NCBI RefSeq assembly: GCF_000150275.1
Contig: NW_002060979.1
Coordinates: forward strand, 280,612 to 344,611
Direction of reading: 5' to 3'
Length of the DNA stretch: 64,000 nucleotides
Origin: Trichoplax adhaerens
Lineage: Eukaryota > Animalia > Placozoa
Position 1 is the first letter of the stretch. Each line of letters starts with the position of its first letter. The translations under genes were made by a program, and so were the position numbers. Positions 38,560-59,933 of the stretch are shown piece after piece. The notes beneath the pieces were generated by a model that was not told where the DNA came from, ran no database searches, and was given only the letters and a program-made list of their open reading frames with translations.

Positions 38560-39191
38560 TGTTACAGTGTTAAATACTGTATTACAGTAGAAATAACTAT
38601 GTTAGGATAATTCTATTAGACTATCCTTATTTAGTTAACTTCTAATTTGGATATACTGTGTTTTAATATAGCACTGACTTTTTATGACAGTGACACTTAT
38701 ACACATACTGAAATTAATAGTTATAATAGGGAATGCAAATCATCTACTTACAGTTCGAATCATTGTGATTGCAATTTACTTATGGTAGACTGTAAATTAT
38801 CATGGAAATGTTCCGTGACAGGACATATCGTAATCTGACTATTCTGTATTAGTCATTACATGTCTATGTTCGTAAATACTGTTGTCTGCATTAAGGGAGC
38901 AGTAGCTAAAATTAATATCTAATTCAGTAAATGATTCTAATGTTAATTGTATTAACTATGAATCATGAACTATTGAGGAGTAATATATAAAAATGCAGTA
39001 TATCGTGAAATAAAGTGAATTCTCCAACTTAGTGTTTAACGTAAAATACGAGGCGTTTAAGTCTTTGTGTAGTCTGCTAGTAGAGCAAAAGTGTTTGTGA
39101 TAGTGTAGATATCGTTCCTTGATACGTGGTTCAAGGAATTAACTTATTGGTCGTGCATTACGTTATCTTGCTGCAAAGCTGTTTTGTGACA
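38560..39191 (+). mobile_element. 632-bp solo LTR (family B)
   Basis: TGTTACAG...GTGACA termini, perfect 5-bp TSD GTACC (38555-59 / 39192-96), TATATAAAAA at 38984; near-identical inverted copy at 28086-28716. Confidence 0.9.
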
Positions 39192-39696
39192 GTACCCTAA
39201 GACTGAAGTAGATTATTCTCATTCTTGAATCGCATAAGTAGCAGGTTTTATTATGCTACAAGTACTCCGCCATTTCTTATGAGTCATCGTAGCGCTTTCT
39301 TCTTCATCATTAGCACATTGCTTTTGTTTGACAACAGGATACAATTACTTCCCTAAAGGCGTGGTGCCTTGAAGAAAAGATCGATTACTAGTTGTTGTTT
39401 TCAATTACAGATAGCGTTAATTGACTGTTGAATAGAAATTAAAGTCTATTGTTGATATTATTGAAATTGTCGAATACGTCTGTTAAATATGTTAATGAAG
39501 TTGTTTAAAAAGTAATATATTTCAATAAAATTATTGGCCTGCCTAATCGTCAATAATTTCCGGTTAATACATCATTGTAGCCATAGTAGAAATACTACTA
39601 GATGATCATGACGTCAATGATTTTCGATCCAGCTATTGCATTTCATAATGAAGGGGCAAGGAAATATTCTTAGCTAGGATTAATTCTTATTAATAG

Positions 39697-42600
39697 GTCG
39701 TGCCTCTACCACTGCTTGCGATAGCCAACCTTGCTTCCATGGATATTGTCAAAGCATTAATACTAATGAGTATCGATGCTTATGTTACAATGGTTACCAA
39801 GGACAACTTTGCAATGAAGGTTTGATTCAATGCTTATTATAATATCTTGGAGGATGCAATGTCTGAACTAATAAATTAACTATACTCTCCTTTGTCTGTA
39901 TTAAGCCTATACGTCTTGCTATAGATCTTTTGAATATTAGAAAAAGTGCATCACTTTGTTATATATCAGAGCTATATTATGCTATTGCATGTTACTAATA
40001 ATGTCTAAATTTGAAGTAAAGATCGTAATGCTGTTCACTGATACGAGTGTAAGCATTTTTCATTAGTTAATGCTATATTGTAACGAGCAATTTTAAGGAA
40101 GAATTTTACCGTTTATTGCATGCTAATCTACAGTAATCAAATATTTTCTCAAATCATGTAATATTGCCTGGTATGAAGAAATACCAGACCCTTTGCTATT
40201 AAGAGAAATTAATTTAAAGCCTATAGTGTCGTAGTTGCAGGCTGTATTATGGCAAAATGAATTTGATTCTATTTTTGTTTGATAGCTATAAATGCATCTG
40301 GGTTACCATGCGGCAGTAGCCCCTGTACGGCTGGCAAGTGTGTTAATGTAAGAAATGAAACCGGAATTGCCTACTTATGCCTATGTAATTCCCAAAATTC
40401 AACTTCCTCTTGTGTGCCAGGTATTGTGAAGTCTGTCAATTCTTAATTTACTTAGTGTTATCATATGAGCTGAGGAGTCAAGCTTTAATATTTTAGTTTA
40501 GTCACAAAATATGTACGTTTAATCATGTAATTAATTAAATTTCATTTAAATTTACAAAATATCCGACTAAGTTAATCATAGAAAACCAATGTACAGTAGT
40601 TAATTATGCTAGTAATTTAATTTTATATAATTGTCACACTTTCAATTCTGTGACAAAGAAATGAAAAGTAAAAGTCTATAAGTAACTGCTGACTTAAACC
40701 CCCTTTTAATAAGCGTTAAAAGACACAGGGAAGTACTGTGAAGAGAGAAATTCTATTAGCATAGACGCATTTACAACTTTTCACCAACATAACTCAACTC
40801 AAATGTTCCCATTTATATAGGAACCGTTTAATTTGTAAATAACTACAGTATAATTATGTTATCTTACTAGGAGAATAATCTAGAACTGAGATACTCCTTA
40901 CATAGCTTTTTTTATCAGTAAATATTTTTGATCTCTAAATCATACTAAATTTTCATCTAAGCATGTACTCGTATGTTGTCTGGTTCAACTGTCATTAGCA
41001 AGAACTTGAATCATCTTACTACTATCTATACATTATAATAATCAATATCAAATACGTAATAAACTATCATAAATAATATCCACGTTAAAGCATTGCTTAT
41101 CTAGTACTGCAAATATGGATATTTTTGATATTAGCTACTACCATACTTATTAAAATGTCCTAAGAGTAAGATATCACTGTAACAGTAATCATGCCAATAA
41201 TTTGATTGCGGTTGAAAAACATCGAATTTTATTCTGATTTGATTGTACGTAACTAATGTACTTGATCATTTCGATAAATTAAATTTCACTTAGAATACAG
41301 CCGTTGTCCTTCGCCATGTGCGAGTAATCCATGTTTAAATGGTCAATGCTCCGTAATTAATAGAGGTACTACTTATGCCTGTGGCTGTTGGCCAGGTTAT
41401 ACCGGCAAAAATTGTGAGAGTACAGGTAAATCTGGAGTAGAAATTTTCATGAATCAATTAATGAGTTAACTAAATAATGGATGGTTCTTAATATTAATAA
41501 ATTAAAAATCGAAATCGTTCGTGATTGTTATCTGTATTTGCCAGTTATAGCACAGATATTAATGTTTTGGCATTTTCTTACTGTATTGCTATTTTATGTA
41601 TGCAATCTTCGCTCGTATTGTATCTTGGCACTTTCAATTGGACGGATTCTTTAATATGTAATTAACATGGAAATATTTCTAATTAATTAATTGCGGCCTT
41701 TAAAAATTTGAATTAATGAGATTTTTTCCTCATAACATTTATAGTATGGTTATCAAAACACTCTAGCACACTGGCAAAGCTGCTCCGTGTATAAAGGATC
41801 ATTTTGCGCTGGCCACGTAAATTATTTAGCAACTAAATTGAACGATGCTAACAAGTATGAAAAATCACTGAGTCTTGTCTATTCATTCGCCCAAGCCACA
41901 GGTGGTATGCCGTATGAATGTCTGAGATTTAGTAAACCCTACGTCTGTAGCTCACTTTATCTACAGTGCTACAATGGAACATCATTTAATAGTATGTGTC
42001 AGAGCGACTGCTTAAAATATCAGACTTTCAGAAAGAATTGCTTTTCCGGTATGATTGGCAGCGATAAAGAATTTGGACTTAAGTCATGCTCATCCATTAA
42101 ACAAAATAATCCTCCACAATGCTTTCATATTCAAGGTAAAATTTCGTCTATAGATTAATGTCATACAACTTTTAGCTTTATATTTAAATTCCACTTTTAA
42201 TAATTTTGCTAACATAAGCCGCCTCTCATAAATATGTATAATCCAATTCCGTTCTTTTCAATTTAATATACTTGATTACGGTACCTTACTTAAGTATCAA
42301 CAGGAATAGAGCTACAGGGAGCATGGAATATGAATTGGATAGCAGTTTTCTTGCTTTCATCAATTGCTAATTTAATATTTGCATTCTTCTTTACATAAAT
42401 ATGAATAAATATCATTGGTATTCAGATCCACCAAGGTAAGTTTTGAATTAAACTATGCTGCATATGCCATTATCCGTATCATTTTGAATGTTTCTTTAAT
42501 TAGAAAAATGTCTGCTGACTATTATGGATGTATTAGTAACAAACGAGAATCTTTTCCTGCTAATATTAATCAAACTTTCCCTTTTCTGTTTTATTCTTAG

Positions 42601-45600
42601 CCCTGATGTTATTGATTATAAAGAGTGCTTTGTCTATAGTGGCAATGTCTGCTCTGGATACTTACCTTCTCTTAATGTTACCGTGGCTGGAAATATTGCA
42701 GCGGACTTGGCAGAAAAAGATATCAAAAATAGTATTGATTTACTCAATACAGCAAGCAACTTTTCGCTTACTTGCCGTGAATATATTTCTGCTACCCTCT
42801 GCCATACTACTTTCAAGCAATGCGATGATCATTCTAACCTATGCAAATCGGATTGTTATAGAATGGTTAAATTATTTAAGACGTGTGCTTCTCAAATCCC
42901 CGGCGTTCAACAATCCATTCTTTACCCTTATATCAATTGTGCAAAGTTATCAGATGACGATTGCGTTAGTTATAACGTGCCCTATCCCCAACCAGGTAAT
43001 ACTGATATCATTTAAAAGTGATTCAACTAACGATGGTATCAATTTACGACATGCTATAAAATGTTATTACGAAAATTTGAAAAAATTTCGTGTAAGGGTC
43101 AATGTATGAGTATAATTTTTATATCAAATTTTTCTCCAAAATTCATTCACTAGATACAGTACCGCTCTTTTCTTTATTAGATTTCTGGAACATAATTGAC
43201 TACTTATTATCAATTTTGTGAAAATTGAAATTACGTTCTTCTCTTTTCTATAGTGGATAATAAGATACGATTAGTCAATGGCAATAATTTAACATTGTCG
43301 AGCGGAATTGTTGAAATCATCAAGAACGACACTTGGTATAGATTATGCTATCATCACGGTTGGAATATGGTATCTGCTCAAGTTGCTTGCAAGCAGTTGG
43401 GATATCGTGGTGCCTTATCGACTGGTTGCTGTGGATCATTTCCTACGCAACCCTATGGTGGTAATCCTCAGTTATCCGTTATGGCTAGTATTTATTGTAC
43501 AGGAGAGGAAAAATATATCGGAGCGTGTCAGTTTAAACGTGATCAATCAGCAACATGTGATGTGCGTAATAGCGCTGGAGTCATTTGTTCCAGTAAGTGA
43601 TATTTCAGCCTAAGCAAAAATTTTTCGGATTAAGTGAAAATTTTTAGGACTATCCTATTCATGTTAAGATCCTAAGAGATGATATATTAGAGGTGATTAT
43701 AATAATTCAAATAAGCTCTAGAAGCTAATCCTTTTTACTTTCATAGATTCAGTATGCGTCAGTAAACCTTGCAATTATGGGAGCTGTGTACCTAATAAAC
43801 AAGATAATAATGCCTATACTTGTAAATGTGATCCAGGCTACACCGGACAGAATTGTGATAAAGGTATTAACAATCACATATAGCATGTAAAATGAGACCT
43901 TGTAATTCTTTGACCGCAAAATACGTAATAAATTGAACGCCACTTTATCTTTATAGTACTAGATAATTGCAGAAATAATCCTTGCCCCGTAAACACTACA
44001 TGTGTTAGAGGAATCTTTGGCTACAAATGCGTTTGCAAAAGTGGCGAATCATGTACTGACAGTAAGTAAAAATTTTTAAGCTTGGATATTAATTAAGGAA
44101 ATAAGTTTGTTTTGTGTGCATGGAATTTGCAGTGATTAAAAAATACTTCTTTTCTTTCTTGGAATACTTTAGCTGCCAACTATAATATTACTGCACGTCT
44201 AGTTAATCATTGGGAAGGCAAGCCTTACACGGGGGTACTAGAATTTTATTATAATGGAACATGGGGACCTAGTTGTGAAGTAAACGCTGCCGCATACCAT
44301 ACAGCATGTCGAAGCATTGGCTATAAGCGTGCCTTTGCTACTTCATGTTGCAGTACTGGTCATTATGCCTCATCTATTAGAGCATTAGATTTCATATTAT
44401 GCAATGAAAACGCTCAGAATTTATACGAGTGTTCTTACGGAAACTACATCCATCGAATTTGTGCAAATCACGGAGGCTTCTGGAATACTATTACTTGCAC
44501 AAGTAAGCAAATAATTATAGCGATAATCAAATCACTTAAATTAATATTTATTTTTTAGAATAGTTATGTTTTAATATGCAATTATTTATTTCACTATAAC
44601 TTTTATAAAATAAGTTTTGCTTCTTTATTCAATCCTTTACAGATGATGCCTGCTTAGCTCAGCCGTGCGGTAATCATGGTCAATGTGTTCATAAAGAATT
44701 TAATAACGACTATTACTGCGTTTGTGATAAATATTTCACTGGAAATAATTGTGAACAAGGTAATACTATACATTCTCATAGGGGGTGGGGTAAAATATAA
44801 ATTTTCAAGTCGCTGCAATCACCTAATATCTTGTCTCTAGTTAATTCAATGATTCCGGAATTGACTGTTGCATACTTATTGATTAAATAGATTATATAAT
44901 AATAATTTTTCCAGTAGCCTAAAGTCTTGGTTAATAAATTAGTTTACACATTATTAACTGATAGCATATTTGTCTCCTGCGAATTTGATTAACAGTAAAT
45001 AGCAACTACTTCATGTTTAGCAATATCAAGTTAATTATTTGTGACGTTACAATACAGGCATTTTCTTATTAGTATAACTTGAGTTAGTTTCTAAAGTATT
45101 GCTCAATTTTAAAAATAGCTTTAGCGTGTGCCTCTAGTCCCTGCCAGAATGGTGGAAATTGTACAAACGATTTGACTAGCTACAATTGCTCATGTCCTTC
45201 AAATTATTTTGGCCAGAACTGTGATCAGTGTAAGATATTAATTTACACACTTCTTTATTTAGATTTATAGCCTTGAATTTTAATATGTGCTAAGTTTGGA
45301 TTTTACTTATTTCTTATGTTAAACGCCTTTAACAGTGCCTGCTTGTTCCTCAAATCCTTGCATAACTGGCTTTTGTGTTAATTTTAACAACAATACTTAT
45401 CAATGCCAGTGTAGTTCCAAATTTACTGGCCAACGTTGTGAATCTGGTAAATTTATCCCGTGTAGTATTTGCTTTTGTTTTGCTGTAAATATAAGTTAAA
45501 TAACAGATTCATATAATTAATCATGCTAAAAAATATAGAATTTAAATGGAAGTAACTTTTAACCTCTTAGGCCTTGCTTGCAATTCTAATCCTTGCTTAA

Positions 45601-48600
45601 ATGGTGCTTCCTGCGTGATCAATGATGTTGGTGATTATCAATGCGGATGCATGAACGGTTTCACCGGCAAGAATTGTGAAACACGTAAGTTACCTGAATC
45701 ATGCATTGACCGAAGTAACCCTTTTTGTCAATATACATCTACACGGTTTAAAGTGGATAGGTAGATAACTCTAACTCGGATTGTTTGATGCCACATTTAG
45801 ATCAGTATCTATTTAATGGCAATGTACGTTTGCAAGGTGGATCAACTTCGATGGATGGATATGCTGAAGTCTATTATAATGGTTCGTGGAGAGGAATTTG
45901 CGACGACAATTTCGGTTTAGTTGACGGGCAAGTCATATGCCGCCAGCTCGGATACGTTGGTGCTGCAAATATTAAATGCTGCTCTAACTTTGGCACCTAT
46001 AATGGCAAATACTGGTTAACAAATGTAGATTGCTATGGAGATGAAAGTGAAATTTCAGATTGTAGGCACGATCCTTGGGGAAATGTTAATTGTGCTGCTA
46101 ACGAGGCCATTACAGTAATATGCACCAGTAAGTATCTGATATAGAGATTTCGATCACTTTTGATTGATTCTCGGACTAAATCAGGAATCCAGAATAGAAA
46201 TATTAGTCTATGCAGCTTGTCTATTTAGTTTTTAAATAAATACTTTTCATAATCTAAGATTAAGTTTAAATTAAATTATATGGTTCTGCCTTATATGGCA
46301 ATCATTTTGATGTTTAATAAATTAATAATTATTATTGAAAGACATCACAGTTACTTGTATTATTTAATTTTTAAATCTTAATCACAGCATTTACGATATG
46401 AGCGAGTTAATACAATGATGAATTTGAATATTAGCGGGTCTGCGTATTCTTAGATCTTACTGTGATATTACCAGTCGATGGTACTTACTGCTAAATCATA
46501 ACGTAATGCGAATCTATTTCAAAGCAATTATTTGCAAACTTTGAACTAGATAATCCATGCCTTTCCAACAAGTGCAATCGGAATCCTTGTGAAATTACTA
46601 ATGCGACGGAGCCTGTACAATACAAATGCACATGTACATCTGCTCAAAGTGGCAAAAATTGTCAGCTACGTAAGTTATACATTAAAGAATCTACAGCAAT
46701 TACTGATAAGAAATCGCAATTATATGAATCTATATACAATACATCGATTATAAGATGTGGTTTAAAACTCGTTACGGTTTATGAACATTGGGAATAGACT
46801 TCATATTTTATCGGCAAAATTACAATTTTAGCACCGATTATTTTTTATTTCTATTTATATTTGTAGGTAATATATGCCAGTTTAATCCGTGCAACAGCCC
46901 TCAAAATTGTACTGATGAGAGTTATGGATATTCATGCAGTTGCCCTAATGGATATTACGGAACTTCTTGTACTTCAAGTAAGAAATTATACTATTACTTG
47001 CTGTTCACGATTGATCTTGCCCGAAGTTTTTAAACGCACTTCTGAATTACATCGATAGGAGCTAACGAAGGAGATGTTCGATTAGTTGATAAAACATCCA
47101 ATAGAACCGGGCGTATTCAAATTTATCATAATGGTCAATGGGGCTCATTTTGTGATCATCGTTTTGATGCAGCCGCAGGCAACGTCTTGTGTCGGCAATT
47201 AGGCATTGGAATATTCCATAGTTATAATACTACTGGAAAAACTACTCAAGGCGAAAAAATATGGGTCGATAACTTTAAGTGCAAGGGAAATGAAATAAAT
47301 ATCACACAATGTGATATACGCCATTGGGGAACAATCATTTGCTCTCCCCAAAAGGATGTCCGTTTAACTTGCCAAGGTTAGCTAAATGTAACTATTTACT
47401 GTCTTTTAAAATTATCTATACTTAGTTCTCTTGAAATTAAGCTGTTATTTAATATGTAACTTTTACGTTTAGAACCGCCACCAACAACACCAACACCTGG
47501 AGCGTAAGTTGATATTCTGCATGTCCATGGTTTAAATATATATCGTTGAGACTTTTAAAGCAAATACTATACCTTTCACTCCAATATTTACACTGGAATC
47601 AACTACTTTTCTAACCTTTAATAATTAACTTATAAAATGTTTGTTTTAGTCCGCTATATAGTTATAAAATATTTTGTCTAATTCAAATCTTAAATTAAAT
47701 GTAAAAAAACTCAAAATTAGATGCAATTTGCAGGATCCTTTGGGCATTCAATTGCTATATTGAGTCCAGTACGAGTTAATTAGCCACAGGGGCTTCAAAA
47801 ATACTTCTACCTCGAAATAAATGTTGATTAATTATATGCTTAACAACTCTATATTATGATTCTAATATTTCTGTTGGTTTAGCGGCGTACAGTAGTCGGA
47901 TATGTAAGTGCTATTTCTCACAGTTATTATTTTCCTATCAATAGAACCACACAGCCAGTAACTTGCGCTACTTTCCGTTCATCGACTGGTCACTGCGCTC
48001 AATACTTAAATGGCTCACAAGTGGATCTAACAAATTACCAAAACCTATCATCAACTGAAGCAATGTATGGTTCTATTTTCACGCTCTTACAATCAACTGG
48101 TGTAATGTCTGTCAAATGCGTACTGTCCATGCTGCCAGCACTGTGCAAGACCTCCTATGGCTCCTGTTATCAAAGCCAGGGAGTACAAACTTTATGTCGA
48201 GAAGATTGCGCCCTGTATGAGCAAGTGGCATTTGAATGTACTGCTGCTGTAATCTATCAAGGAGGACTTGGTGGTCAAAATTGCTTCTCACTACCTTCCA
48301 GAAATCCAAATAACAATCAATGCGTTAGGCTAGAGGGATATTTAAACAGTGATATATTAAGTGAGTAAGATACAGTACTATCGTGCTTAAGTTGTCTAAG
48401 GAGAATTTAAATTAATTTCAATTTCTTAAGATTGTCAATATTCTATTCAAAACCTACTTACTGATTTGAAATTTACTACTCATTACGTTACTGAAAAACA
48501 ATCTACCACATTAAAGCAATTAAATGCAATGCAAATTTAACATGATAATTTTTACTTTTAATTTATAATTTCTACTTGTATCCTTGTAACGAAGGCAAGC

Positions 48601-51600
48601 CACAAGCAAATTACACGTTAGTAGAGTCACATTTATTATTACAAGTGATATTTTTTTAATTATAATTTATTTCCATTGACGTTTAATATTTCTCGGTGTA
48701 TTTATTTACACAGTGCACAATGCGAAATGTATCGTGGATCAATGTGCAAAAATTATTTAGCTGGAGCAAAAGTTTATGTTCCAGTAGGATTAACTCAAGA
48801 AAAGATTGAAGCCTATCTACAAGTTACTCAAGCCCAAATCTTGACTTCATCCGCTAATGGCGGTACGGGCAGCTGCTTTAATCAAGTTTGGGAACATATT
48901 TGTTATTCAGCCTTCCCCGTATGCCAGGGCAATGTACTTTATGGAATTTGTCGAGAAGATTGCACAAAATTCCTTGCCTCAAATTGCGTGCGACCCTATA
49001 GTGCTAACGGAATTAACATCCGACCTGATTGTTCTATACTTCCGGGAATAAATGATGTTCAATTCAAATGTTATAGTGCAATTACTGGCTATGGTTTGTA
49101 ATATTCAGTTAAATTTACTTCAATATAATCTATTGCTCACTAAATACTTCCAATTTTGTTTCAATCTGATAAATATTTATTCCCGGATCCCACCTATTTA
49201 GATCATACTATTCCCACCAATCAGCCTACAACTATTCCAGTAACTATTGCTACTACAGGGATAGTGACGACTCCAATGGCCGCAACTACCTCATCTTCTG
49301 GCCAATCTACCAACGGTGCTACTGAAAATGGAACTAGTAGTTCTACTAATACTACTAATGGATCTGCGTCAGGTACAGCAGGTGCTGCAACGACTATGGC
49401 TGCAACTACTATGACCGCAACTACTGCAACTATGTTCCAACCTACTACTCAAAGGTATATCATTTTTGTAGAGATCATAGTATTCGATTGGCTTAGTTAA
49501 CTTTCGTGATTCTATTTGCAGTACTAGCGTAGGCCATCCATTCAATGAGCAATTATTTTGCTACTACGTTCCGGAAGGTATAGCACTCTTCTGATAGATA
49601 GTACGGTATTTTACTTGGATTAGTTTCTTGATCGTAACCCGTATTATCGAAATGTATTTCAAGAGTTCAATTTTAACATAACAGCGAATTATCTTTGACA
49701 ACGTGATCTTCTTTTGACTAAGAATATGCATATACTCGAATATCTAATTAACAGGAGAAAAACTACCATGCGATAGCTCTCCGTGCTCAAATAATGCTGA
49801 ATGTATCAACATGGTCACTGAAAATTTTAGTAGCTATTACTGCAAATGCAAAATTGGCTATTTTAACGGACAAAGATGCGTTGATGGTGCGATATAATAT
49901 TGAATTAATTTAAAATTTATTTTTGAACTTTAATCCATCGATTTCAATATGAAAATTTAGTTCATTGACTGAATTTAATAAAATTTACTTTTTATTAATC
50001 GAATTTATTTGCATTATTATTTTACTGATAGAAATCCCAGTGAAAGATATTTCCATTACTGCAAACTCTTCCATGCCTCTTAGCGGTTCTAATCTTGCAT
50101 TTATATGCGAGGCTTATGGTCGACCGGCGCCCGTCATTACTTGGTATAAAGATGGAACAATCTTTCAAGCTGATAATGGCAATAACGTCATTATTTTGAA
50201 TCAAGTTGTAAGCGATATTCGGGTTAGATCAGTATTAATACTGAGCCCAGTTAAAAATAGTAATGGTGGCAACTATTGGTGTACAGCAACAATTCCGCCA
50301 GAAATCATTCAGAGCAGCAATATTACGATCGGTAAGAGCCATGATAGTACAAAGTTATAAAACTATCTTAGCTATAGCTAGGTAGTTAGGTACCTATAGA
50401 ATATGCCAAGCAGAAAGAAATCGGTATCGCATTTATCCGCTCAACTTAAAATAATAGCTAATGACTTGTCTAAGCCAATTACTTTAAAGATCACATTTTG
50501 ATATTGATTACAGCAAATCAAATTCTAGAATTGTAGTGAAATGATACAACATATGCTAAATTAGAATTGATTATAGCCTTTATTAGAGCATATTTGTCAG
50601 CTCCATACAGTATTGAATTGGGTACTGCGAATCTACTAATTTTGTTGTCAATGATACGCTATTATGTATGTTTTGATTTAATATTTCTACGATTTCGGTA
50701 ATTAGATCCAAATTCATGTTATTCTGCTCCGTGTATGTTTGGGAAATGCTTCGATGAGTATGACGGATTCCAATGTGTCTGTGATCGAGGATATACCGGA
50801 GTTCAGTGTCAATCAGGTGTTAAAGAGATTTCATTAATATTAAATCTTAATTACAATTTATAAACCGAATTCATTTTAATAAATCTTTTTGGTCTCTTTA
50901 GATATCGATGAATGTTTAAACTCACCATGTGTTCAGGGCAACTGCAAAAACTTAGCTGGATCATTTAATTGTTCTTGTAATCCAGGCTGGAAGGGAAGAT
51001 TATGCAATGGTAATTGATAGCTCTAATTCCTTATAAATGTTTGAGGTAACTAATTACTATTTTATTTAAACTCGTTCAGCTTCGGTGCCTTGTTACTCTA
51101 ATCCATGCGCTTATGGTACTTGTAAGAATTTATTAAACGCATATTTATGCGAATGCACACCGGGCTACACTGGTATAAATTGCGCTGAAGGTATACTTAA
51201 TATTATACTTTTTTGACCTTTTTAGCGGCTAATTAATTACGAATGTCAACTATATTTACGATAAAATTATAATTTTATATGGTAATTAATGATACATATC
51301 TGATATACTGTTAGATAATAGCTATAACAACGATGATTTCATGATCATTAGATATCAATGAATGCCTACCAAATCTTTGCGTCCATGGAAGCTGTAACAA
51401 TCTAGTTAACATGTTTAACTGCTCTTGTACAAATGGATGGAAAGGAAGACTTTGCAATAGTTAGTAATTATAGAAATCAATGTTGGTATTTTGAGGCTGA
51501 AACCCTAAATATAGTTTATTAACTAATGCTTTATTGCTATCTACAATGGTTACAGAAATAAACTTTTAACCTTAAAATAACTATATCTTAAAAAAACATT

Positions 51601-54600
51601 TTTATTTCATCATGTGCAATTGAAATCAATCAATTTTTATCTTTCAGATTCCATTGGATGTACATCCAATCCTTGCTTAAATGGACAGTGTACAGATATG
51701 ACAGATGGCTATACATGTAACTGTACAGTTGGTTTCACTGGCATTCAGTGTGAAACCGGTAAATTCTTCTAGATTAGTTATTATAAATTAATCATAGTCA
51801 ATCAAAATTAGTTGCCATAAGACAATTATTCCGATCTATCCATTTCAGATATTAATGAATGTGTAAGTAGTCCGTGTAATCATGGAACTTGTAATAATTT
51901 GGTCAATAAATATAACTGTAGCTGTGAAGATCGATGGAGTGGAGATTCTTGTGATAGTAAGTCAGCAGTTTAATCTAGTTAGCGTGTCGGAACTGAGCAT
52001 TATCAATATCGTGCTTTAATAAAACTAAATTTGATGCTTGAATGTTTTAATCAGTTTCATCGGGATGTGACTCTAACCCATGTATCCGTGGATTTTGCTT
52101 GAACGATAATACCATTGGATATAGGTGTATTTGCCCTTCGGGATATACTGGCAAGCAATGTAATACAGGTATTCCTATGATTCCATGCAAATGGTACCAT
52201 AACTGTAGGGTGTAAAAATAGATTATTTATATTACATTTACGTGCATTTAGCTTTACAAAGATTTAGGATTTATATCTTTCACGCACTATAGCTCTCAAA
52301 ATTAATGAGTTGTTCATTCTTAAATTATCGTATTTATACGTGGCTTAAATTCTCTATAACTAAGAAGGCTTTATCCAAATAAGTTAATGTTAAGTAGTTC
52401 TATCTGTATACTTAGCGGCCAGCATTTAATGGACAATTTGATAACGACTAGTTCTTATAATTTAAAGATATTGATGAATGTCTATCTGGCCCATGTGTCA
52501 ATGGAGTATGTAACAATTTAGTTGGGCAGTATTCATGTACTTGCAATAGCGGATGGACAGGCAATTTATGTGGCACAGGTTAGATACTATGTTCCTATCA
52601 TTGCGTGCTGTTTAATAATAGACGTTAGGTGTTATAGCAATGAGCAACTGATGGCTGATTTTTCTACAGACATTGATGAATGCAAAGTTGGTGGTTTCTG
52701 TTCTCCTGATGCTGTATGTACCAATTTGATGGGCTCTTATTCTTGCACCTGTAAAGATGGCTTTATTGGAAATGGAACATATTGCAGAGGTTTATAAAAT
52801 TTAGTGATATATTACAAACAAAATTTTGCCCTCCTAAATGCTCTAGCCCGATTGATTAAAGCGATTTAATAATAGAAGGAAGAGATTCTCGTAGATAGTA
52901 GTAAAGTTGACCATAATAATAATGTTTAAAGTGACATTTAACGTGATAGCTATATCTTCAAATGACTTTCTACAGCTCCACATTTATATCCACATGGTAT
53001 TAATCTTGGAGATTCGTTCTTTGGCAATTCGGATGATGGAATTTATAAAATGACGCTGCAGACAGATATTTACTATATGCAGGCATTCCATAGGGACTTA
53101 TATGTACGCACTTGCTACATATTCTAATACCTAAAATTATTAAATATCAAAGATACTGTAATATCAGTAAATAGCTAGCGATATTCATTTGATTGCTATA
53201 GCTATAATAACTATTTTTTCTACTAAATACTGATACTAAAAGCAATTTGAATTTTCAGGTTTCAATTAACGGATATGTCAGTATTGGTACCAGATACCAA
53301 ACAGCCTATCCTCGACCTTTCCCCGCACCTACCAACATATCTATTATAGCACCTTTCTTCGCAGATGCCGATGCACGAGGATATACATCATCCGGGATAT
53401 TGATGCATGAATATGATACAAGTGATAATTCTACCACAGCTCAAGGTATATTAAGAAGGGCAAAACTGGATGTAGCCAACTTTCAGAATTACATGCAAAA
53501 TAATCCTAGTGACACTCAGTATGGCGTTTTCAATCAAAGTATAAATGGTTTCGTCCCTACACATGTTATCGTTATTACATGGCAAGATCTCTTACCTTCA
53601 CCTAATTCATACTATGTTAATCTGCGAACGGTAAGCTGATGGTAAACTAAATATACTAAAGTGTTTGTATAGAAAGCTATACATGATGGCTCTTAGTATA
53701 CAGAAATTTAGAATCGAATTGCGGTACACCAGATTGGACTGCTAGAAATTTGAAAGTATAGCATTCTATTGTCTATTGTTTTAATTTTCATTTCGTTAAC
53801 ATTTATACTGTTAAAAGATGTTCTGAATATTTAAAAAGACTACTTATACAGACTTATACCTAATTAAATAACAGATAAATTAAGAATTACCGTCCAAATA
53901 TATATAAATTGAGTCTATTTACTCTACAATATATGATTGTAATTTACTGGTAATGTACGATACCAAAGACTGATGATGATTGTTGATTAAATATAGTATT
54001 ATTCCTTATGAAACTACTACCTTGCTGAAATTATAGCAGTTAATGCAGTATGTACGTATGTAAGAAAATGAACACGAATCAATTGTTTTCATGCTTTTGT
54101 AGACAAATACATTCCAACTCGTCCTAATTTCTAACGGCAAAAACCTCTTTGGATTGTTCTTATACGATATTGGTGGTATGTTGTGGTATAAAGTCAGTAT
54201 ATCTAGGCCTAGAAGTGGCTATTCCTATGGTATAGCACCGTATTTTCATGAAACTTCCTATTCCGGTAGTACTACCATGCTAAGAATTGATCGTTATAAC
54301 GGAAATTATGGTCAACAATCCATATGGGCATATCGATTAGATAACCCTAAAACTCCTGGAATTAATTATGATAATTTGTGTAGAAAATGGTACAATAACG
54401 AGCCCCCAGCTTCTTATTACACTAATTTCCTAGCAAGGCGACCTTGTCCATGTATAGCTGGACAAGCTAGCTTAGACAGGCGATTTGTGTTTAATTTCAC
54501 TTCATTCTGCGCTACATCATTATTTTCGTTTCCACGTGGAAATCTTTACGGAGTGAGTTCAGTAAAATTGGCTCAAAATTTTAATTTTTATTCCACAAGT

Positions 54601-57600
54601 AACTCCGTCTCTAGTTACGTACTTAGTGTAGTTTTATTTTTAAGCTAACCTATTCTTTTTGATCTGATAGGTTAAGCAACGTTGTTGTTACTCAAGGGCA
54701 ATCTTAAGCTTTGGAGCCTTGCTTTTGGGCAATCCAGGTGGTGCTACATTTATCTTTAGAAATGCAACTCAACAAGCGGAATCTGATACTGCCTATCAAT
54801 ATTGCTGTGTTGCGAGTAATTTATGCAATTTATATTATAAGAAAAGGCCAAGTAACAATTGCCAAGGGTATCGACCTCCACGACGAGCCTGGTTTTGGGG
54901 TGATCCTCATGTCAGAACTGTTGATGGCTTAACCTACACCTTCAACGGGCTTGGTGAATATACGCTTTTGCAAACTATCGACAGCAATTACTTTAATTTG
55001 CAGGGTAGAACGATGAAAGCTATCCGCAATGTAACAGAAAAGGCTAGAGCTACGGTTTTTTCGGCATTTGCATTAAGCCAAAACGATTCTAATAAGGTTC
55101 AAGCAACGATGAATTTGGCCGAGAACGATATAGATATATTAGTTAATAGCCGAACATTAATCAAATTGAGAAATTTACCTGTCAATGAATTTCTGCCTTT
55201 TGAAAACGTACAGATATCGAGATCACTCAATGGTACTTTAATTGTTTCATTTTCTTCTGGAATTTCAGCGGAAATTGCTATGCTTAGTCAAATGCTGACA
55301 GTCGCGATGAATTTGCCGAACTGGATCCAAGGCAATACACGCGGTCTCCTCGGTACTTTAAATGGTAATCCCTCGGATGATTATTTGAGACCCAATGGAA
55401 CGTATTTGAGATCGAATGCTACAGAGAGTGAAATTTATTACGGGTTTGGACAGCTATGTAAGTGAATAACCTTATTATTTAAACATCCTTTGTGATATAT
55501 GCCAGTAATATTGGTTTGCAATCGAAGTAGGTGTTAAATTTATGATTTCTATTAATTGAATATCTCTTAATTGTATAGATCAAATTACACCACAGGAATC
55601 ACTGTTTACCTATCCTTCTGGCATAGGAACGGCAAATTATACAGATCCTTCTTTCGTACCTATATTTTCAGAAAATATACAACAGTTATTTGGTACCAAT
55701 CAACAACTTTACCAACAAGCTTTACAAAGTTGCGGTAATGATATATCTTGCCTATACGATGCTGCACTAACCTTAGATTTACAAGCTGCTGTCAGTGGAA
55801 AAGATGTTGCCACTCAGTACCAAGAAACAACTACACAATTAGGTATAATCTAGTGTCTGTCATTTAAGGATGATAATCATTTAATCCAAAAAGCTGACTA
55901 TAAACTCATTGATATATTTTTTTCAAATATCTAATACAGAAAATTTCCCTCCACAAATAACTGGGATCACAATTTACAATGTCACCTTTGGTACTATATT
56001 TACAACATCAATTGAAGTTACCGACCGAAATGAAAATGACACAGTGACAGTATCACTAGTAAATGCACCTTCTGGGGCATCATTTGACAACAAAACCAAT
56101 GTGCTGACTTGGAATGTACAAACCTATCAAAATATTGTCATGGAATTTGTTGCCCTTGATTCTAAAGGCGCTAGAAGTATTTTGAGACCACAGATTATTA
56201 TGTGCTATTGTGCAAATGGTGGAACTTGTGATTATAGGTATAACTTAAGTCAGTAGTAACTGTCATATCTAATGCTCATTTTTCATTTTTTACGCGACTG
56301 TAAAATTAACAAATCAATATTACACGCGTCATAATTATATAACAAAATGATTTAGATCTGGATTAATTGAGGAAGGTTCAGTAAATCGAGTCCAGTGTCA
56401 ATGCAATTCTGCCTATACTGGGATACGTTGTCTGAATGATTTCAATGCATGCTCTAACTTCCCTTGCTACGGACAAACAACTTGCACGGATAAACCAGCT
56501 CCATCATCGGGCTATACCTGCGGTCCTTGTCCATCTAGCCTAACAGGAGATGGCCAAAAATGCTATGGTTAGAATTAGTCGCACTATTCATGCTAATGTA
56601 CTCACTTTATTTACAATATCATTATTTCTCTTGCTGAATGCAGATATTAACATCTGTGGCAGTAATTCTTCGCTTTGCCATCAGCTTTGCTTGAATGGAG
56701 ATGGCGGCTATCGATGCGATTGTGAAATTGGTTATACGTTACAGAAAGATAATCGTACTTGCAAAGGTAGGTTATGCTTTCGAGCATTAATTATTTCGTC
56801 GGCTAGATGTTGTAACCCATGAAAATTTGATAGGACACTTCAATTTTGCTCATGCTTGATAATTTACTCCTATTCCTATCTATGCCCTTGCAGATATTAA
56901 CGAATGCTCTACAGTCAATACTTGTGGCGATGCAGCTCGATGCATTAACACAAATGGATCATACTATTGCCAATGTCGAATCAACTACAATTCTACTACA
57001 ATAACTTTACAAGATACAACTCGTCAAACAGATCAACATTGCAAAGGTTTAAGACTTCCAATAAAAACTCTATACTTTTCTCTAATTTTATTCTAAAGTT
57101 ACGAAGTTTGCAATACTAATGTTAATTATTGCTTGATCCCAACAGTGCAAGCATATAACGGAAGGATGACTATAGATAGGCCCTACAGCAATCAATTGGC
57201 TGATTCTAATGCTCTACAGTACCAAGTTTTGAGCCTAAGCGTTGTGCAGGCAGTAAGTAATTGAACGATTAAAGGACATGAAGTTAGAGTATTGCTATAT
57301 ACCAGTTTTTTCATCTGCTTGTTAATTTGCTTAATGATATGCATATAAAGATGTATCGTAACTAACTAGATGGTATACTTGCACTATTTCTCGTAGTTTT
57401 CCTAGCATTATTCTTCTACTTAAAAGGTTATAATATATAAATACCGAGTCTTTCGACAATTTCTTGAGACAGTCATTATAACATTTATCGAACTAGTGTA
57501 CCAATACTCTAATTAATATTGAATAGTTTGATAATGCAATAATCATTAAAGAAATTCTTTAAATAGTCTTGGCAAGCTGCATCAGATAAGTAATAAAAAA

Positions 57601-59246
57601 TATTTCAATATTACTTTAATAGTTCTTTTATCAATTTTTATATATTTAGTAGTAACCAATGCCCGTATTATTTATTCTTATTAATAAAACTTTTATTGAT
57701 AATTTGCTTGTTGCTTTTAGCTGTCATCGAGTATGAATCAAAATAGTCTTACAAGAGCCAATTATTTAGATTCAGTGGTAGAATCATTCACGTAAGCAGA
57801 TTGGGATAATTTCTTCCTTGGAGCAATGCAAGATTATGTCAATGAAATTTACAATTTAATCCCTCTTTCACTTAAATAACTGAATGTGCGCCCTTTATTA
57901 AAAGAGTAAGCAGCAAAATGTTGTTAATTTTATATTATTAGGCAAACAATCAATGGAATGACTTCTTGCCACTATATTTTAATTTTAAGAGCTACTTCCA
58001 ATATTACTGTAGTGCAGCTAAATACAGTAGCTGGTAGCGTTGTAAGAATTGGAAATTATAATGTTACTCAATCCAGCCTCTCAGGTATGAAAGTAATTTT
58101 CTTTCGTAAATTATTGCAATACTAATTAATTAATGATTAATCTTGGAAAGATTACAATGAATGTGAAAACTTAACTCCCTGTGGGCAAAGTAAAATTTGC
58201 AACAATACCATTGGAAGCTATAAATGTAACTGCATAGCTGGGTATGCTAGAAATTCTTCTAATGGACTCTGCCAAGGTTAGTTTTTATTAAACTATTTCT
58301 TTACAACTTTAATTCATCATTAATTAAATGGAAGACACTAACTGTCCTTTAATTATGGAGGATAAAGGTGATTAGTACCGTTTCATTTTGATTTTACTAA
58401 TTTTCTGTAATTCTTAATTTGCAATACAGCAAATTGCCCTAGAAGTTACTGCTTAAACCAAGGTCAATGCTATTACAATAACGGCAAGATGGCATGCTCG
58501 TAAGTAATAATTTCACATAACAGGATGTTGTATGTTTCGGTCCGAATTTGAAATAGTAGTATAAATGTCATTAAAAAATTGAAATTCTAATTTGCACCGC
58601 ATCCTTTGTAATCTATCAACAGATGTACCGCCAGCTATACCGGTGATAGGTGCCAAAACGTTCGTCTGTCAGGTAAAACTTTTAGATAAAGAATGCACAA
58701 CTACAAGTATAAACATACATCGAAACTAAATTTCAATCTAAATTCATGTCAACATGAACTAATGTCTATATTTTATTGTAGTCGTAGCAATCATCGGAAT
58801 ATCTTTGGGTTCTGTTGTTGGAGTAATTACAATAATTGCCCTAGTTGCATTCGCAATCAAAAAATGTAGATCAGAAAAAACGTAAGTTAGAGTAATGAAC
58901 AAGGGGCTTCAAGTTAATCTATCCTGATACTATTTTGTATTAGCAATAATATTAATACTTTATAATTTACTAGAGCTCACATAACTGATGATCAGGACGG
59001 CAAAAGTACCGAAAATATGTTTATGTCCTCTGTTTTAGTTGGTGAGTCAACATGAATCATAAAACACTAATAGATGTACTAGAACAGCAATGAAATAAAT
59101 TCTTTGCCTACGATATCACACCAAATATCTTTTTTGATAAATTAACGGTAATTATAAATACTTTATAAATAACATGAATAGGAGGTACAATTAATAGAAA
59201 CTATAAGAATGATGATGAAAAGGAAAATGAATATGAAGCCGTGTAA
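39697..59246 (+). CDS. Gene 4: giant MUC4/SUSD2-like transmembrane mucin with Frizzled CRDs, SRCR, Ig, ~27 EGF, NIDO-AMOP-VWD, SEA and TM (~52 exons, ~3,100 aa)
   Basis: Exon-by-exon translation with GT-AG sites and compatible phases from 39697 ([11 protein letters not shown]..) to the stop at 59244-46 (..ENEYEAV*). ORF-track fragments correspond to FZ (41787, 42524, 48021, 48676), SRCR (43253, 45785, 47187), mucin (49156), Ig (49965), NIDO (53247, 54154) and AMOP/VWD (54719, WFWGDPH). Confidence 0.85.
40632..41184 (-). mobile_element. 553-bp solo-LTR-like element (family C) in a gene 4 intron
   Basis: TGTCAC...GTAACA termini; 5-bp TSD with one mismatch, ATAAT/GTAAT; homologous to 9194-10343 minus the nested insert. 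Confidence 0.82.
41767..42995 (+). CDS. Gene 4: Frizzled-like cysteine-rich domains 1 and 2 (ROR/MuSK-type), linked by a 10-nt microexon
   Basis: 10-Cys pattern starting CxxYxGxxC (CSVYKGSFC; CFVYSGNVC) with C-x3-C (CQSDC; CKSDC); exons 41767-42135, 42426-42435, 42601-42995. Confidence 0.85.
43254..47376 (+). CDS. Gene 4: four SRCR domains interleaved with EGF exons
   Basis: SRCR exons 43254-43592, 44173-44502, 45801-46127 and 47059-47376 (RLV/Q.G..G.VEVYYNG.W..ICDD..VICRQLG..), with 2, 4 and 2 single-exon EGFs between them. Confidence 0.88.
47945..49093 (+). CDS. Gene 4: Frizzled-like CRDs 3 and 4
   Basis: [34 protein letters not shown] and [33 protein letters not shown]. Confidence 0.85.
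49202..49454 (+). CDS. Gene 4: Thr/Ser-rich mucin-like (O-glycosylated) stalk
   Basis: [38 protein letters not shown]. Confidence 0.8.
52976..55842 (+). CDS. Gene 4: NIDO-AMOP-VWD core with GDPH autocleavage motif (54899-54910)
   Basis: LYPHG..SDDG; [18 protein letters not shown]; [11 protein letters not shown]; CPC..QA.LD.RF; CCY; YCC..LC.LY...RPS.NC.GY.PP; [24 protein letters not shown]; [15 protein letters not shown]. Confidence 0.92.
57146..59246 (+). CDS. Gene 4: SEA, cbEGF, juxtamembrane EGF, TM and acidic Tyr-containing tail
   Basis: SEA exons 57146-57252, 57721-57791, 57942-58084; cbEGF 58151-58276; split EGF 58430-58499 + 58623-58672; TM 58782-58881; tail 58974-59041, 59182-59246. 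Confidence 0.82.
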
Positions 59247-59883
59247 GTTGACAATGCAATATTGTATTAAAGCTCTACGTAAATCTCAGGCTGATATTGT
59301 TACCTTACTGATCTCGCGGTATCTAAATCAATTAATCACCATTAATCGATATAGTGAACCAATGATTTAACTCCAAGGATTCTAATGAAGATTTTGTATA
59401 AGAAACTCGCTAGAAAACTTCATACTAGGCTATGATAGAAAGAAACTTATAGCAGATGAAATTCAATGAAATAAATCTTTTTATCGTCATTCTATAAATT
59501 AGTGCTAAATTACTTCCTTGTTGCTATAGGATCAATGTAAGCTTTAACTCTTTCATGACGCTAGTTATAGGTAGTTTGTTTATAATTTTTTGGATTGTTC
59601 TACTTCTTCAAGTTCGCTTTTAGTAAGAAAAACTTGTTCGCTAATATTTTCAAAGTACACATTCAGTAATACTAATTTATGCTTGTTAATCGATTCTTTC
59701 ACGATTTGAATAAAAATTAAGACATTTTTTACCTTGCTTACCTGTTTTAAGTTATTTAGTAAGGCATACTCGTACATGTACAGTAATAAACAGCCTCTAG
59801 TTTATATTTTGATAGGATAATGAGGAAAATATATCCGTAAATGGGCTATGAAGTATCACTTTTATCATCTCAATTGAAAGCAG

Positions 59884-59933
59884 NNNNNNNNNNNNNNNNN
59901 NNNNNNNNNNNNNNNNNNNNNNNNNNNNNNNNN
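59884..59933. other. Assembly gap (50 N)
   Basis: Run of N. Confidence 1.

What the first reader, a model, noticed from the sequence alone, without database searches (positions are those of the whole stretch)
39697..59246. Giant sheddable mucin-receptor fusing four ROR/MuSK-type Frizzled CRDs and four SRCRs onto a MUC4-like NIDO-AMOP-VWD core
Seen: one continuous spliceable frame giving EGF3-FZ2-SRCR-EGF2-SRCR-EGF4-SRCR-EGF2-SRCR-FZ2-mucin-EGF-Ig-EGF9-NIDO-AMOP-VWD-EGF4-SEA-EGF2-TM. Known: FZ CRDs bind Wnt or lipid moieties, SRCR domains often bind microbes, and NIDO-AMOP-VWD defines MUC4/SUSD2/Mesh-type proteins. I know of no characterised protein combining all of these. Inference: an apical glycocalyx sensor that could couple microbial recognition to Wnt/lipid sequestration and release its ectodomain by autocleavage.
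Basis: partly seen in the sequence, partly recalled or inferred. Interest (0 to 1): 0.85.

Follow-up and report, generated by a model that had tools for sequence, protein, structure and literature searches.

The report
Placozoan mucin-4-like receptor with Frizzled domains
This is a real, expressed Trichoplax gene for a roughly 3,180-residue membrane glycoprotein that adds four ROR/MuSK-type Frizzled domains and four SRCR domains to a mucin-4-like core. The combination is unusual but not unique, since a second Trichoplax gene and several lancelet proteins have it too, and its function is untested.

Summary

- **One transcript.** RNA contigs from three studies splice SRCR4, both downstream Frizzled domains, the Ser/Thr-rich linker, EGF, Ig and the following EGFs together with GT..AG introns. 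This gives one open frame of 858 codons with no stop.
- **Gene model.** My full model has 54 exons, a 9,549-nt coding sequence and 3,182 residues. It fits two abutting contigs of one run that total 9,771 nt.
- **Frizzled type.** The Frizzled domains are ROR/MuSK-type by both profile and fold.
- **Organism and family.** The genome is Trichoplax adhaerens. The gene belongs to a large placozoan family with the layout SRCR-EGF-NIDO-AMOP-VWD-EGF-SEA-TM, named "mucin-like" in public records.
- **Not unique.** Only one other locus in this genome (C1414:10.94-10.96 Mb) also carries Frizzled domains. Lancelet RefSeq predictions (XP_078670161.1, XP_066276376.1) also combine Fz, with or without SRCR, with NIDO-VWD-SEA-TM. 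Their Frizzled domains are of the receptor type, so the two lineages probably acquired them independently.

Wnt or lipid binding is speculative.

Verdict: a new variant of a known kind, of moderate interest.

The parts
38931..38979 (+). Candidate first coding exon: ATG, a hydrophobic N-terminus (MILMLIVLTM...) and a phase-1 GTAATA donor. Unverified.
   Evidence: scan; sequence read. X10 record 1 holds 3,019 nt upstream of 46550, against 2,854 nt in my model. That leaves about 165 nt for a 5'UTR.
39697..41425 (+). Three EGF exons: 39697-39819, 40286-40420 and 41294-41425.
   Evidence: Pfam EGF on two of the three. All are phase 1-1 with AG/GT sites.
41767..42995 (+). Fz CRD 1 (41767-42135) and Fz CRD 2 (42601-42995). 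A 10-nt microexon at 42426-42435 may lie between them. The junctions are predicted only.
   Evidence: Pfam Fz at 26.3 and 32.5 bits. 10 invariant Cys in A1. Splice options; both keep the frame.
43254..43592 (+). SRCR 1
   Evidence: Pfam SRCR 67.2 bits
43747..44061 (+). Two EGF exons
44203..44502 (+). SRCR 2
   Evidence: Pfam SRCR 39.1 bits
44643..45684 (+). Four EGF exons
45801..46127 (+). SRCR 3
   Evidence: Pfam SRCR 92.5 bits. Its 3' end is the loose end that RNA contigs carry before 46550.
46550..46977 (+). Two EGF exons: 46550-46669 and 46867-46977.
   Evidence: GT..AG joints in runs X4, X6 and X10
47059..47376 (+). SRCR 4
   Evidence: Pfam SRCR 84.9 bits; joints
47473..47503 (+). 31-nt microexon encoding a Pro/Thr linker
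   Evidence: Joints 47376>47473 and 47503>47945 in three runs; translated
47945..48360 (+). Fz CRD 3
   Evidence: Pfam Fz is weak at 18.1 bits. It has all 10 Cys of A1. Joints.
48595..48616 (+). 22-nt microexon (linker)
   Evidence: Joints in three runs
48714..49093 (+). Fz CRD 4
   Evidence: Pfam Fz 37.9 bits. AF2 model with pLDDT 74. Best folds are MuSK and ROR2.
49202..49577 (+). Ser/Thr/Pro-rich linker in two exons (49202-49454 and 49522-49577), about 100 aa
   Evidence: Joints. Composition: 50 S/T/P in 120 aa. The only repeat is 15 nt x 2.8 copies.
49755..49886 (+). EGF
   Evidence: Pfam EGF 37.9 bits
50032..50331 (+). Ig domain
   Evidence: Pfam Ig_3 50.8 bits; joints
50706..52789 (+). 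Nine EGF / EGF_CA exons
   Evidence: Joints are shown as far as 52168.
52976..54552 (+). NIDO in three exons (52976-53103, 53259-53630, 54103-54552). The last exon also holds the start of AMOP.
   Evidence: Pfam NIDO 39.6 and 39.4 bits; AMOP 24.2 bits. Exon ends fit the gaps in the alignment to paralogues.
54671..55457 (+). Rest of the AMOP region plus the VWD. The GDPH motif is at 54899-54910.
   Evidence: Pfam VWD 62.2 bits. GDPH located. It is conserved in all paralogues and in vertebrate MUC4.
55579..56237 (+). C8-3_MUC4 (55579-55842) and a He_PIG-like Ig module (55940-56237)
   Evidence: 57-68% identity to paralogues.
56356..57046 (+). EGF block in three exons, about four EGF domains
57146..58084 (+). 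SEA-like module (57146-57256, probably 57758-57791, and 57942-58084). The canonical cleavage position reads NGMTS at 57952-57966.
   Evidence: Exon-wise matches to an HMM of paralogue SEA domains, collinear but weak. The register against P0158 and P0004 was checked by eye. No Pfam hit.
58151..58672 (+). EGF_CA (58151-58276) and a juxtamembrane EGF (58430-58499 plus 58623-58672)
   Evidence: Pfam EGF_CA 39.1 bits; sequence read
58782..58881 (+). Transmembrane helix followed by KKCRSEK
   Evidence: hydrophobic 21-mers at aa 3106-3131
58974..59246 (+). Cytoplasmic tail in two exons (58974-59041 and 59182-59246), with the stop codon at 59244-59246. An ATTAAA signal lies at 59266.
   Evidence: The length of X10 record 2 leaves about 59 nt of 3'UTR.

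Best explanation
This is one 54-exon gene of Trichoplax adhaerens. It encodes a type-I membrane glycoprotein of about 3,180 residues.

**Family.** It is a member of the placozoan-expanded 'mucin-like protein' / SRCR+EGF scavenger-receptor family, whose layout is SRCR-EGF-NIDO-AMOP-VWD-C8-Ig-like-EGF-SEA-EGF-TM. Two pairs of ROR/MuSK-type Frizzled cysteine-rich domains were added to the N-terminal arm of this gene and of one paralogue.

**Shown here.** The domain content, the splicing into one transcript, expression in whole-animal RNA, the ROR/MuSK affinity of the CRDs, and conservation of the GDPH motif.

**Inferred.**
- The protein sits on an epithelial surface with a long EGF-spaced arm that displays SRCR and CRD binding modules.
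- Like MUC4 and SUSD2, it is probably split at GDPH into a large distal subunit and a membrane-anchored VWD-EGF-SEA-TM subunit that stay associated.
- It probably acts as a multi-ligand surface binding or protective (glycocalyx, pattern-recognition or adhesion) molecule rather than as a gel or brush mucin.
- Its SEA module is probably non-cleaving.
- What the CRDs bind is unknown.
For: **Single transcript**
- 15 listed GT..AG joints (table 5), identical in runs of three studies.
- The transcript-supported chain 46550-51459 is one ORF of 858 codons with no stop.
- X10 records of 3,291 and 6,480 nt abut at 47100/47101. Together they equal my coding sequence of 9,549 nt plus short UTRs.

**Domains and motifs**
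- Pfam hits on single exons.
- CRD type by profile against the PDB: ROR2 4e-14, MuSK 7e-11, FZD4 2.5e-3. By fold: MuSK 3hkl and ROR2 9fse rank first.
- GDPH is kept.
- TM helix and tail.

**Family and organism**
- The VWD exon is 53-57% identical to Trichoplax 'mucin-like' proteins such as RDD42220.1 (SRCR x4-NIDO-...-SEA).
- The genome is T. adhaerens, because TRIADDRAFT_62718 matches it at 100%.
- A paralogue with (Fz-Fz-SRCR)x3-Ig-NIDO-AMOP-VWD lies at C1414:10944206-10957537.

**Literature**
- Kamm 2019 lists 45 SRCR membrane proteins in Trichoplax sp. H2, 18 of them in an 'SRCR+EGF' class (PMC6321704).
Against: - No functional data exist.
- The 5' third (38931-46127) and the 3' part (52168-59246) rest on predicted splice sites and contig lengths, not on laid joints.
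- The start codon is a guess.
- AMOP is just under Pfam's cut-off and SEA has no Pfam hit.
- It is not known which paralogue the published 'mucin 4-like' gene is.
- No public protein model of this locus was retrieved, so I could not compare my model with an annotation.
- Contigs cannot show transcript ends or isoforms.
Confidence: 0.62

Rival explanations
1. The Frizzled domains make the protein a membrane-tethered Wnt (or lipid) binder. It would act as a sink or co-receptor that shapes Wnt signalling at the epithelial surface. This is the core of the reader's idea.
For: - There are four CRDs with an intact 10-Cys scaffold.
- ROR CRDs take part in WNT5A signalling (PMC11219042).
- The genome has three Wnt genes.
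- The CRD pairs are kept in a paralogue, which suggests selection.
Against: - The CRDs are ROR/MuSK-type, and the human ROR2 CRD lacks the lipid-binding pocket of Frizzled CRDs (abstract of PMC11219042).
- Many non-Frizzled CRD proteins have no shown Wnt role (abstract of PMC6747125).
Confidence: 0.12
2. It is a cell-cell or cell-matrix junction or adhesion component, as Mesh (NIDO-AMOP-VWD) is in insect smooth septate junctions, rather than an apical sensor.
For: It has the same NIDO-AMOP-VWD core plus an Ig-like module. Mesh is described as a septate-junction protein in PMC4964579 (abstract). The tail ends in E-A-V, a possible PDZ ligand (this is my own inference).
Against: Mesh lacks SRCR, Fz, long EGF arrays and SEA. 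The only published note on this placozoan family suggests a glycocalyx role (PMC12013895). No localisation data exist for this gene.
Confidence: 0.15
3. There are two adjacent genes, an SRCR/Fz gene and an EGF-NIDO gene, or the contigs are chimeric across EGF repeats.
For: Contigs alone cannot prove one molecule. One X4 contig has a loose end at 51665 that comes from EGF exons near 45431 and 45572, which shows that repeat-driven misjoins occur.
Against: - Every consecutive exon from 46550 to 52168 is joined by GT..AG joints in three studies.
- There is no stop, start or signal-peptide exon in between, and the phase is kept.
- The paralogue has the same order.
- The contig lengths fit one mRNA of 9.77 kb.
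Confidence: 0.03

Closest known systems
Trichoplax 'mucin-like proteins' / SRCR+EGF scavenger receptors (e.g. RDD42220.1 of Trichoplax sp. H2, TRIADDRAFT_54443, TRIADDRAFT_62718)
   Same: They share the SRCR x n, EGF arrays, NIDO-AMOP-VWD with GDPH, C8-3, the Ig-like module, EGF, SEA, EGF and TM. The VWD exon is 53-57% identical.
   Different: None of these paralogues carries Fz domains (Pfam; HMM). Most keep the SEA G-S-[IV] site, which this gene lacks.
Second Fz-bearing locus of the same genome, C1414:10944206-10957537
   Same: It has ROR/MuSK-type CRDs in A/B pairs, SRCR, Ig, NIDO-AMOP-VWD (GDPH), C8 and the Ig-like module.
   Different: It has six CRDs and three SRCRs as (Fz-Fz-SRCR)x3, with few EGFs between them and a long single 3' exon. 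Its 3' end was not worked out.
Lancelet predictions XP_078670161.1 (6,305 aa), XP_066276376.1 (3,573 aa) and Bbelb_226600
   Same: They show Fz repeats, with or without SRCR, upstream of NIDO-AMOP-VWD(GDPH)-C8-Ig-like-EGF-SEA-TM. The VWD is 42-43% identical to this gene.
   Different: Their CRDs are of the Frizzled-receptor/sFRP type (best PDB hits FZD4 and FZD7 at 1e-15) and there are many more of them (8-15). They also have extra SEA and thyroglobulin modules. All are uncharacterised.
Vertebrate MUC4 (also SUSD2 and insect Mesh)
   Same: NIDO-AMOP-VWD core with GDPH, C8-3_MUC4, membrane-proximal EGFs and a single TM.
   Different: MUC4 has a huge tandem-repeat mucin domain and no SRCR, Fz or Ig. 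Here the Ser/Thr/Pro-rich stretch is about 100 aa.
ROR1/2 and MuSK receptor tyrosine kinases; corin
   Same: The CRD subtype is closest to ROR2 and MuSK. An Ig domain is in the same protein. From my own knowledge, corin shows that Fz and SRCR can coexist in one membrane protein; lancelet 'CORIN'-named relatives appear.
   Different: This protein has no Kringle, kinase or protease domain. In this genome no Fz hit lies near a Kringle hit.

Membership tests
MUC4 / SUSD2 / Mesh-type NIDO-AMOP-VWD proteins | NIDO domain | tested here: met
   PF06119 at 39.6 and 39.4 bits on two exons that together cover profile positions 3-186.
MUC4 / SUSD2 / Mesh-type NIDO-AMOP-VWD proteins | AMOP domain between NIDO and VWD | tested here: inconclusive
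   PF03782 reaches 24.2 bits against a cut-off of 25, over positions 3-42 only. The next exon's first 80 aa give no hit on their own. The region is 47-52% identical to paralogues. The domain is split by an intron and the joined sequence was not searched.
MUC4 / SUSD2 / Mesh-type NIDO-AMOP-VWD proteins | VWD with GDPH motif, followed by C8-3_MUC4 | tested here: met
   PF00094 62.2 bits and PF23263 33.2 bits. GDPH lies at 54899-54910 and is conserved in the family and in bird and hare MUC4. Cleavage itself is not testable here.
Membrane mucins (MUC4 as a mucin) | Long tandem-repeat Pro/Thr/Ser domain | tested here: not met
   There are about 100-120 aa at 42-50% S/T/P. TRF finds only a 15-nt unit x 2.8 copies.
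Frizzled-type CRD, ROR/MuSK subtype | Ten-cysteine Fz fold | tested here: met
   10 invariant or near-invariant Cys in 10 modules. Pfam Fz is above the cut-off for 2 of 4 modules. The AF2 model of CRD4 matches the MuSK, ROR2 and FZD4 CRDs.
Frizzled-type CRD, ROR/MuSK subtype | Closer to ROR/MuSK than to Frizzled/sFRP CRDs | tested here: met
   Profile A1 against the PDB: ROR2 55.7 bits, MuSK 42-45 bits, Nrk 41.6 bits, against FZD4 20.7 bits. Foldseek gives the same order.
ROR / MuSK receptor tyrosine kinases | Kringle and/or an intracellular kinase domain | tested here: not met
   The cytoplasmic tail is about 50 aa with no kinase. There is no Kringle in the gene or near any Fz hit of the genome.
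Frizzled-type CRD | Binds Wnt or a lipid | not testable with these tools
The ROR2 CRD lacks the lipid pocket (PMC11219042).
SRCR superfamily | SRCR domain | tested here: met
   PF00530 at 67.2, 39.1, 92.5 and 84.9 bits against a cut-off of 26.1.
SEA-domain membrane proteins with autoproteolysis | SEA fold | tested here: inconclusive
   No Pfam hit on the single exons. There are weak collinear matches to the SEA HMM of paralogues (best i-E 9e-4), and the register is convincing by eye. The paralogues' SEA domains are Pfam-positive.
SEA-domain membrane proteins with autoproteolysis | G|S[VI]VV cleavage motif between strands 2 and 3 | tested here: not met
   The aligned position reads N-G-M-T-S (57952-57966). 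The GSVV further on aligns with the last strand.

The most novel reading that the evidence does not exclude
The paired ROR/MuSK-type CRDs are working Wnt (or lipid) binding sites on a surface mucin-4-like protein. If so, placozoans tether or sequester Wnt at an epithelial surface through a scavenger-receptor scaffold, and lancelets reached the same design independently with Frizzled-type CRDs. That would be a recurrent, undescribed class of 'CRD-mucin' Wnt modulators.
Probability: 0.1. Interest if true: 0.72.

Novelty: new variant of a known kind. Interest (0 to 1): 0.42.

Why it matters
It gives a transcript-backed gene model for a very large placozoan surface protein, for which I could retrieve no public protein model.

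ROR/MuSK-type Frizzled domains here occur outside receptor kinases, on a mucin-4-like scaffold, in an animal with three Wnt genes and no evident Fz-Kringle (ROR-like) locus.

Fz plus NIDO-VWD-SEA-TM (with SRCR in XP_078670161.1, and Fz+SRCR+NIDO in Bbelb_226600) recurs in lancelets with a different CRD subtype. This looks like repeated evolution of one architecture, which hints at a function worth testing, either binding of Wnts or of other ligands at epithelial surfaces.

On present evidence, though, it is one more product of the domain shuffling already documented for placozoan scavenger receptors.

Tried and rejected
**Looking for a public protein model of this locus**
- I searched the VWD exon against 1.84 billion representatives.
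- I ran two word-index searches with paralogues as carriers, covering lengths of 510-4,550 aa.
- I ran tblastn of all 257 proteins fetched up to that point against the window.
- Nothing at 85% identity or more was found.

**SEA**
- I first took the GSVV at model residue 3007 for the SEA cleavage site. I rejected that after aligning with the paralogues, because it sits in the last strand.
- I looked for SEA with Pfam on single exons and found nothing.

**Start codon**
- An ATG at 39279 (MSHRSAFFFIISTLLLF) looked like a signal peptide. It has no donor in a phase that fits the 39697 acceptor.

**CRD pairs**
- A tree of the 10 CRDs splits first-of-pair from second-of-pair modules, but with weak support (62/61). 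I treat this as suggestive only.

**Other searches**
- The ESM Atlas search only re-found 'Fz'.
- Paper searches for Fz+SRCR+NIDO/AMOP found nothing. The Kamm 2019 supplements do not mention Frizzled or NIDO.

**Limits**
Exons were joined only inside scripts to check the frame and count residues.

Full report
**What is there**

The window is AT-rich (about 30% G+C). Between 39.7 and 59.2 kb on the + strand it holds a dense series of short open stretches rich in cysteine. I ran Pfam exon by exon, by reference.
- Four SRCR domains score 39-92 bits.
- Four Fz domains score 37.9, 32.5, 26.3 and 18.1 bits against a cut-off of 32.1.
- There is an Ig domain, NIDO on two exons, the start of AMOP (24.2 bits against 25), VWD (62.2 bits), C8-3_MUC4 and a He_PIG-like Ig module.
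- 18 of 20 EGF exons tested, and four more 3' of the VWD, hit EGF families.

**One transcript**

Runs that hold about 40% of the words of 44000-53900 behave as spliced RNA. I laid four of them on 46400-52390. Three runs from three studies (X4, a declared RNA-Seq library, plus X6 and X10) show the same GT..AG joints between every consecutive exon from 46550 to 52168. Two of these exons are microexons of 31 and 22 nt that precede the third and fourth Fz domains. X5 lies unspliced at low depth and is probably DNA.

The transcript-supported exons 46550-51459 form one frame of 858 codons without a stop. Most of their junctions are phase 1. The SRCR/Fz half and the EGF-Ig half are therefore one reading frame, and the joints continue to 52168. 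The link onward to NIDO rests on the predicted exon chain and on the length of X10 record 2.

The loose end before 46550 is the end of the SRCR3 exon.

In run X10 a contig of 3,291 nt ends at 47100, a polymorphic site, and one of 6,480 nt starts at 47101.

**Gene model**

Using AG/GT sites, phase rules and alignment gaps to paralogues, I built a model of 54 exons. It has a coding sequence of 9,549 nt and 3,182 residues, with a single stop at 59244-59246. The median intron is 140 nt.

The model places 2,854 nt upstream of 46550 and 4,556 nt downstream of 50331. The X10 contigs hold 3,019 and 4,615 nt there. That leaves about 165 nt of 5'UTR and 59 nt of 3'UTR, and an ATTAAA signal lies at 59266. 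The fit supports the model's overall length but not each junction.

Still unverified are the start codon (candidate ATG at 38931), the junctions before Fz1 and Fz2 and the small SEA exon.

The joined protein was used only inside scripts for frame checks.

**Domain-level tests**

*Frizzled domains.* The four Fz modules, aligned with six from a paralogous locus, share ten cysteines (A1). The A1 profile finds the ROR2 CRD (4e-14), MuSK (7e-11 to 7e-10) and Drosophila Ror2/Nrk (9e-10) far ahead of FZD4 (2.5e-3). An AlphaFold model of CRD4 (pLDDT 74) matches the MuSK and ROR2 CRDs first and FZD4 next.

*Cleavage motifs.* The VWD exon carries W-F-W-G-D-P-H (54899-54910). This motif is conserved in every placozoan paralogue and in bird and hare MUC4.

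*SEA.* The SEA module is recognisable only by weak, collinear matches to the Pfam-positive SEA domains of paralogues. At the canonical cleavage position 8 of 9 paralogues have G-S-[IV], while this gene reads N-G-M-T-S. The GSVV further on aligns with the last strand. SEA autocleavage is therefore not supported.

*Mucin stretch.* The Ser/Thr/Pro-rich stretch is about 100-120 residues, and its only repeat is 15 nt x 2.8 copies. 'Mucin' overstates it.

*Membrane anchor.* A 26-residue hydrophobic helix is followed by a tail of about 50 residues ending in EYEAV.

**Organism and family**

The genome has 105.6 Mb in 1,414 contigs. It holds TRIADDRAFT_62718 at 100% identity, so it is Trichoplax adhaerens.

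The VWD exon is 53-57% identical to several Trichoplax 'mucin-like' proteins. RDD42220.1 of Trichoplax sp. H2, for example, reads EGF-SRCR x4-NIDO-...-EGF-SEA-EGF. At least 15 loci of this VWD family exist in the genome.

Kamm et al. 2019 list 45 SRCR membrane proteins in H2, 18 of them in an 'SRCR+EGF' class, and stress that most domain combinations are phylum-specific (PMC6321704). Mayorova et al. [quoted passage not shown] Neither paper names Fz domains, and I cannot tell which paralogue they mean.

**How rare is the Fz addition?**

A Pfam Fz scan of the genome gives 17 hits. Outside this gene, the only cluster next to a family VWD is C1414:10944206-10957537. It reads Fz-Fz-SRCR three times, then Ig-NIDO-AMOP-VWD(GDPH)-C8-Ig-like-EGF.

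None of the placozoan paralogues I fetched has Fz.

Outside Placozoa the picture changed when I searched all fetched relatives with Fz profiles.
- Lancelet XP_066276376.1 has Fz x8 (433 bits), SEA x4, thyroglobulin, NIDO, VWD and C8-3.
- XP_078670161.1 (6,305 aa) has five SRCR and 15 Fz modules, then NIDO-AMOP-VWD(GDPH)-C8-Ig-like, SEA and a TM.
- Bbelb_226600 lists Fz, SRCR and NIDO.

The combination is therefore not unique. The lancelet CRDs, however, are of the Frizzled/sFRP type (FZD4 and FZD7 at 1e-15). They barely match the placozoan profile. Independent recruitment is the simpler reading, though a proper tree is needed.

**Mechanism**

The best-supported reading is a surface glycoprotein of the placozoan scavenger-receptor / mucin-4-like family.
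- It would carry a long EGF-spaced arm that displays SRCR and CRD binding modules.
- It is probably processed at GDPH, as MUC4 and SUSD2 are.
- It is anchored by a non-cleaving SEA-EGF-TM stalk.

The domain content, the splicing of 46550-52168, expression and the motifs are shown. Surface location, processing and ligand binding are inferred.

Wnt or lipid binding by the CRDs is possible, since the genome has three Wnt genes. It is weakened because the nearest solved relative, the human ROR2 CRD, lacks the lipid pocket (PMC11219042). A junctional, Mesh-like role is a second rival. The two-gene reading is essentially excluded.

**Verdict**

This is a new variant of a known kind. The architecture is real and transcript-backed, I found it described in no paper of the searched library, and it is shared by one paralogue and mirrored in lancelets. 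Interest is moderate (0.42). The scan had noted this same stretch before (s1-790366).

Noticed in passing
window 47473-47503 and 48595-48616: Two microexons of 31 and 22 nt, seen in three RNA runs, each encode a short linker just before a Frizzled-domain exon and shift the phase from 1 to 2. A 10-nt candidate with very strong splice sites lies at 42426-42435, before CRD2.
   Followed up: partly
window 51665 (loose end) versus 45431 and 45572: One X4 RNA contig continues upstream of 51665 with sequence from the junction of two EGF exons 6 kb away. This is either a repeat-driven assembly chimera or a rare exon-skipping isoform.
   Followed up: no
G000:C1413:5199435-5199776 (L010): Another CRD locus scores 60.8 bits with the placozoan ROR/MuSK-type profile, although it was not used to build that profile. 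It could be a third family member or the nearest thing to a ROR/MuSK gene.
   Followed up: no
whole genome G000: None of the 17 Fz hits lies near any of the 35 Kringle hits, so no Fz-Kringle (ROR-like) locus is evident in Trichoplax by this rough test.
   Followed up: partly
window 1-39700: The 39.7 kb upstream of the gene has only two ORFs of 90 aa or more on either strand. It is either a long gene-poor stretch or holds only small exons.
   Followed up: no
window 59884-59933: A run of 50 N (an assembly gap) lies about 640 nt downstream of the stop codon.
   Followed up: no
The tail ends in N-E-Y-E-A-V, a possible PDZ-binding end with two Tyr residues nearby.
   Followed up: no
G000:C1412:3.92-3.99 Mb; C1414:1.23-1.32 Mb; C1413:7.33-7.40 Mb: The VWD 'mucin-like' family sits in several tandem clusters in the genome, with at least 15 loci in all.
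   Followed up: no
window 46859-52285 (table 3): Many single-base differences separate the RNA runs from the assembly. One is 47100 A>G, where the X10 contigs break. These are strain or allele polymorphisms, and no DNA run of the same animals was available.
   Followed up: no
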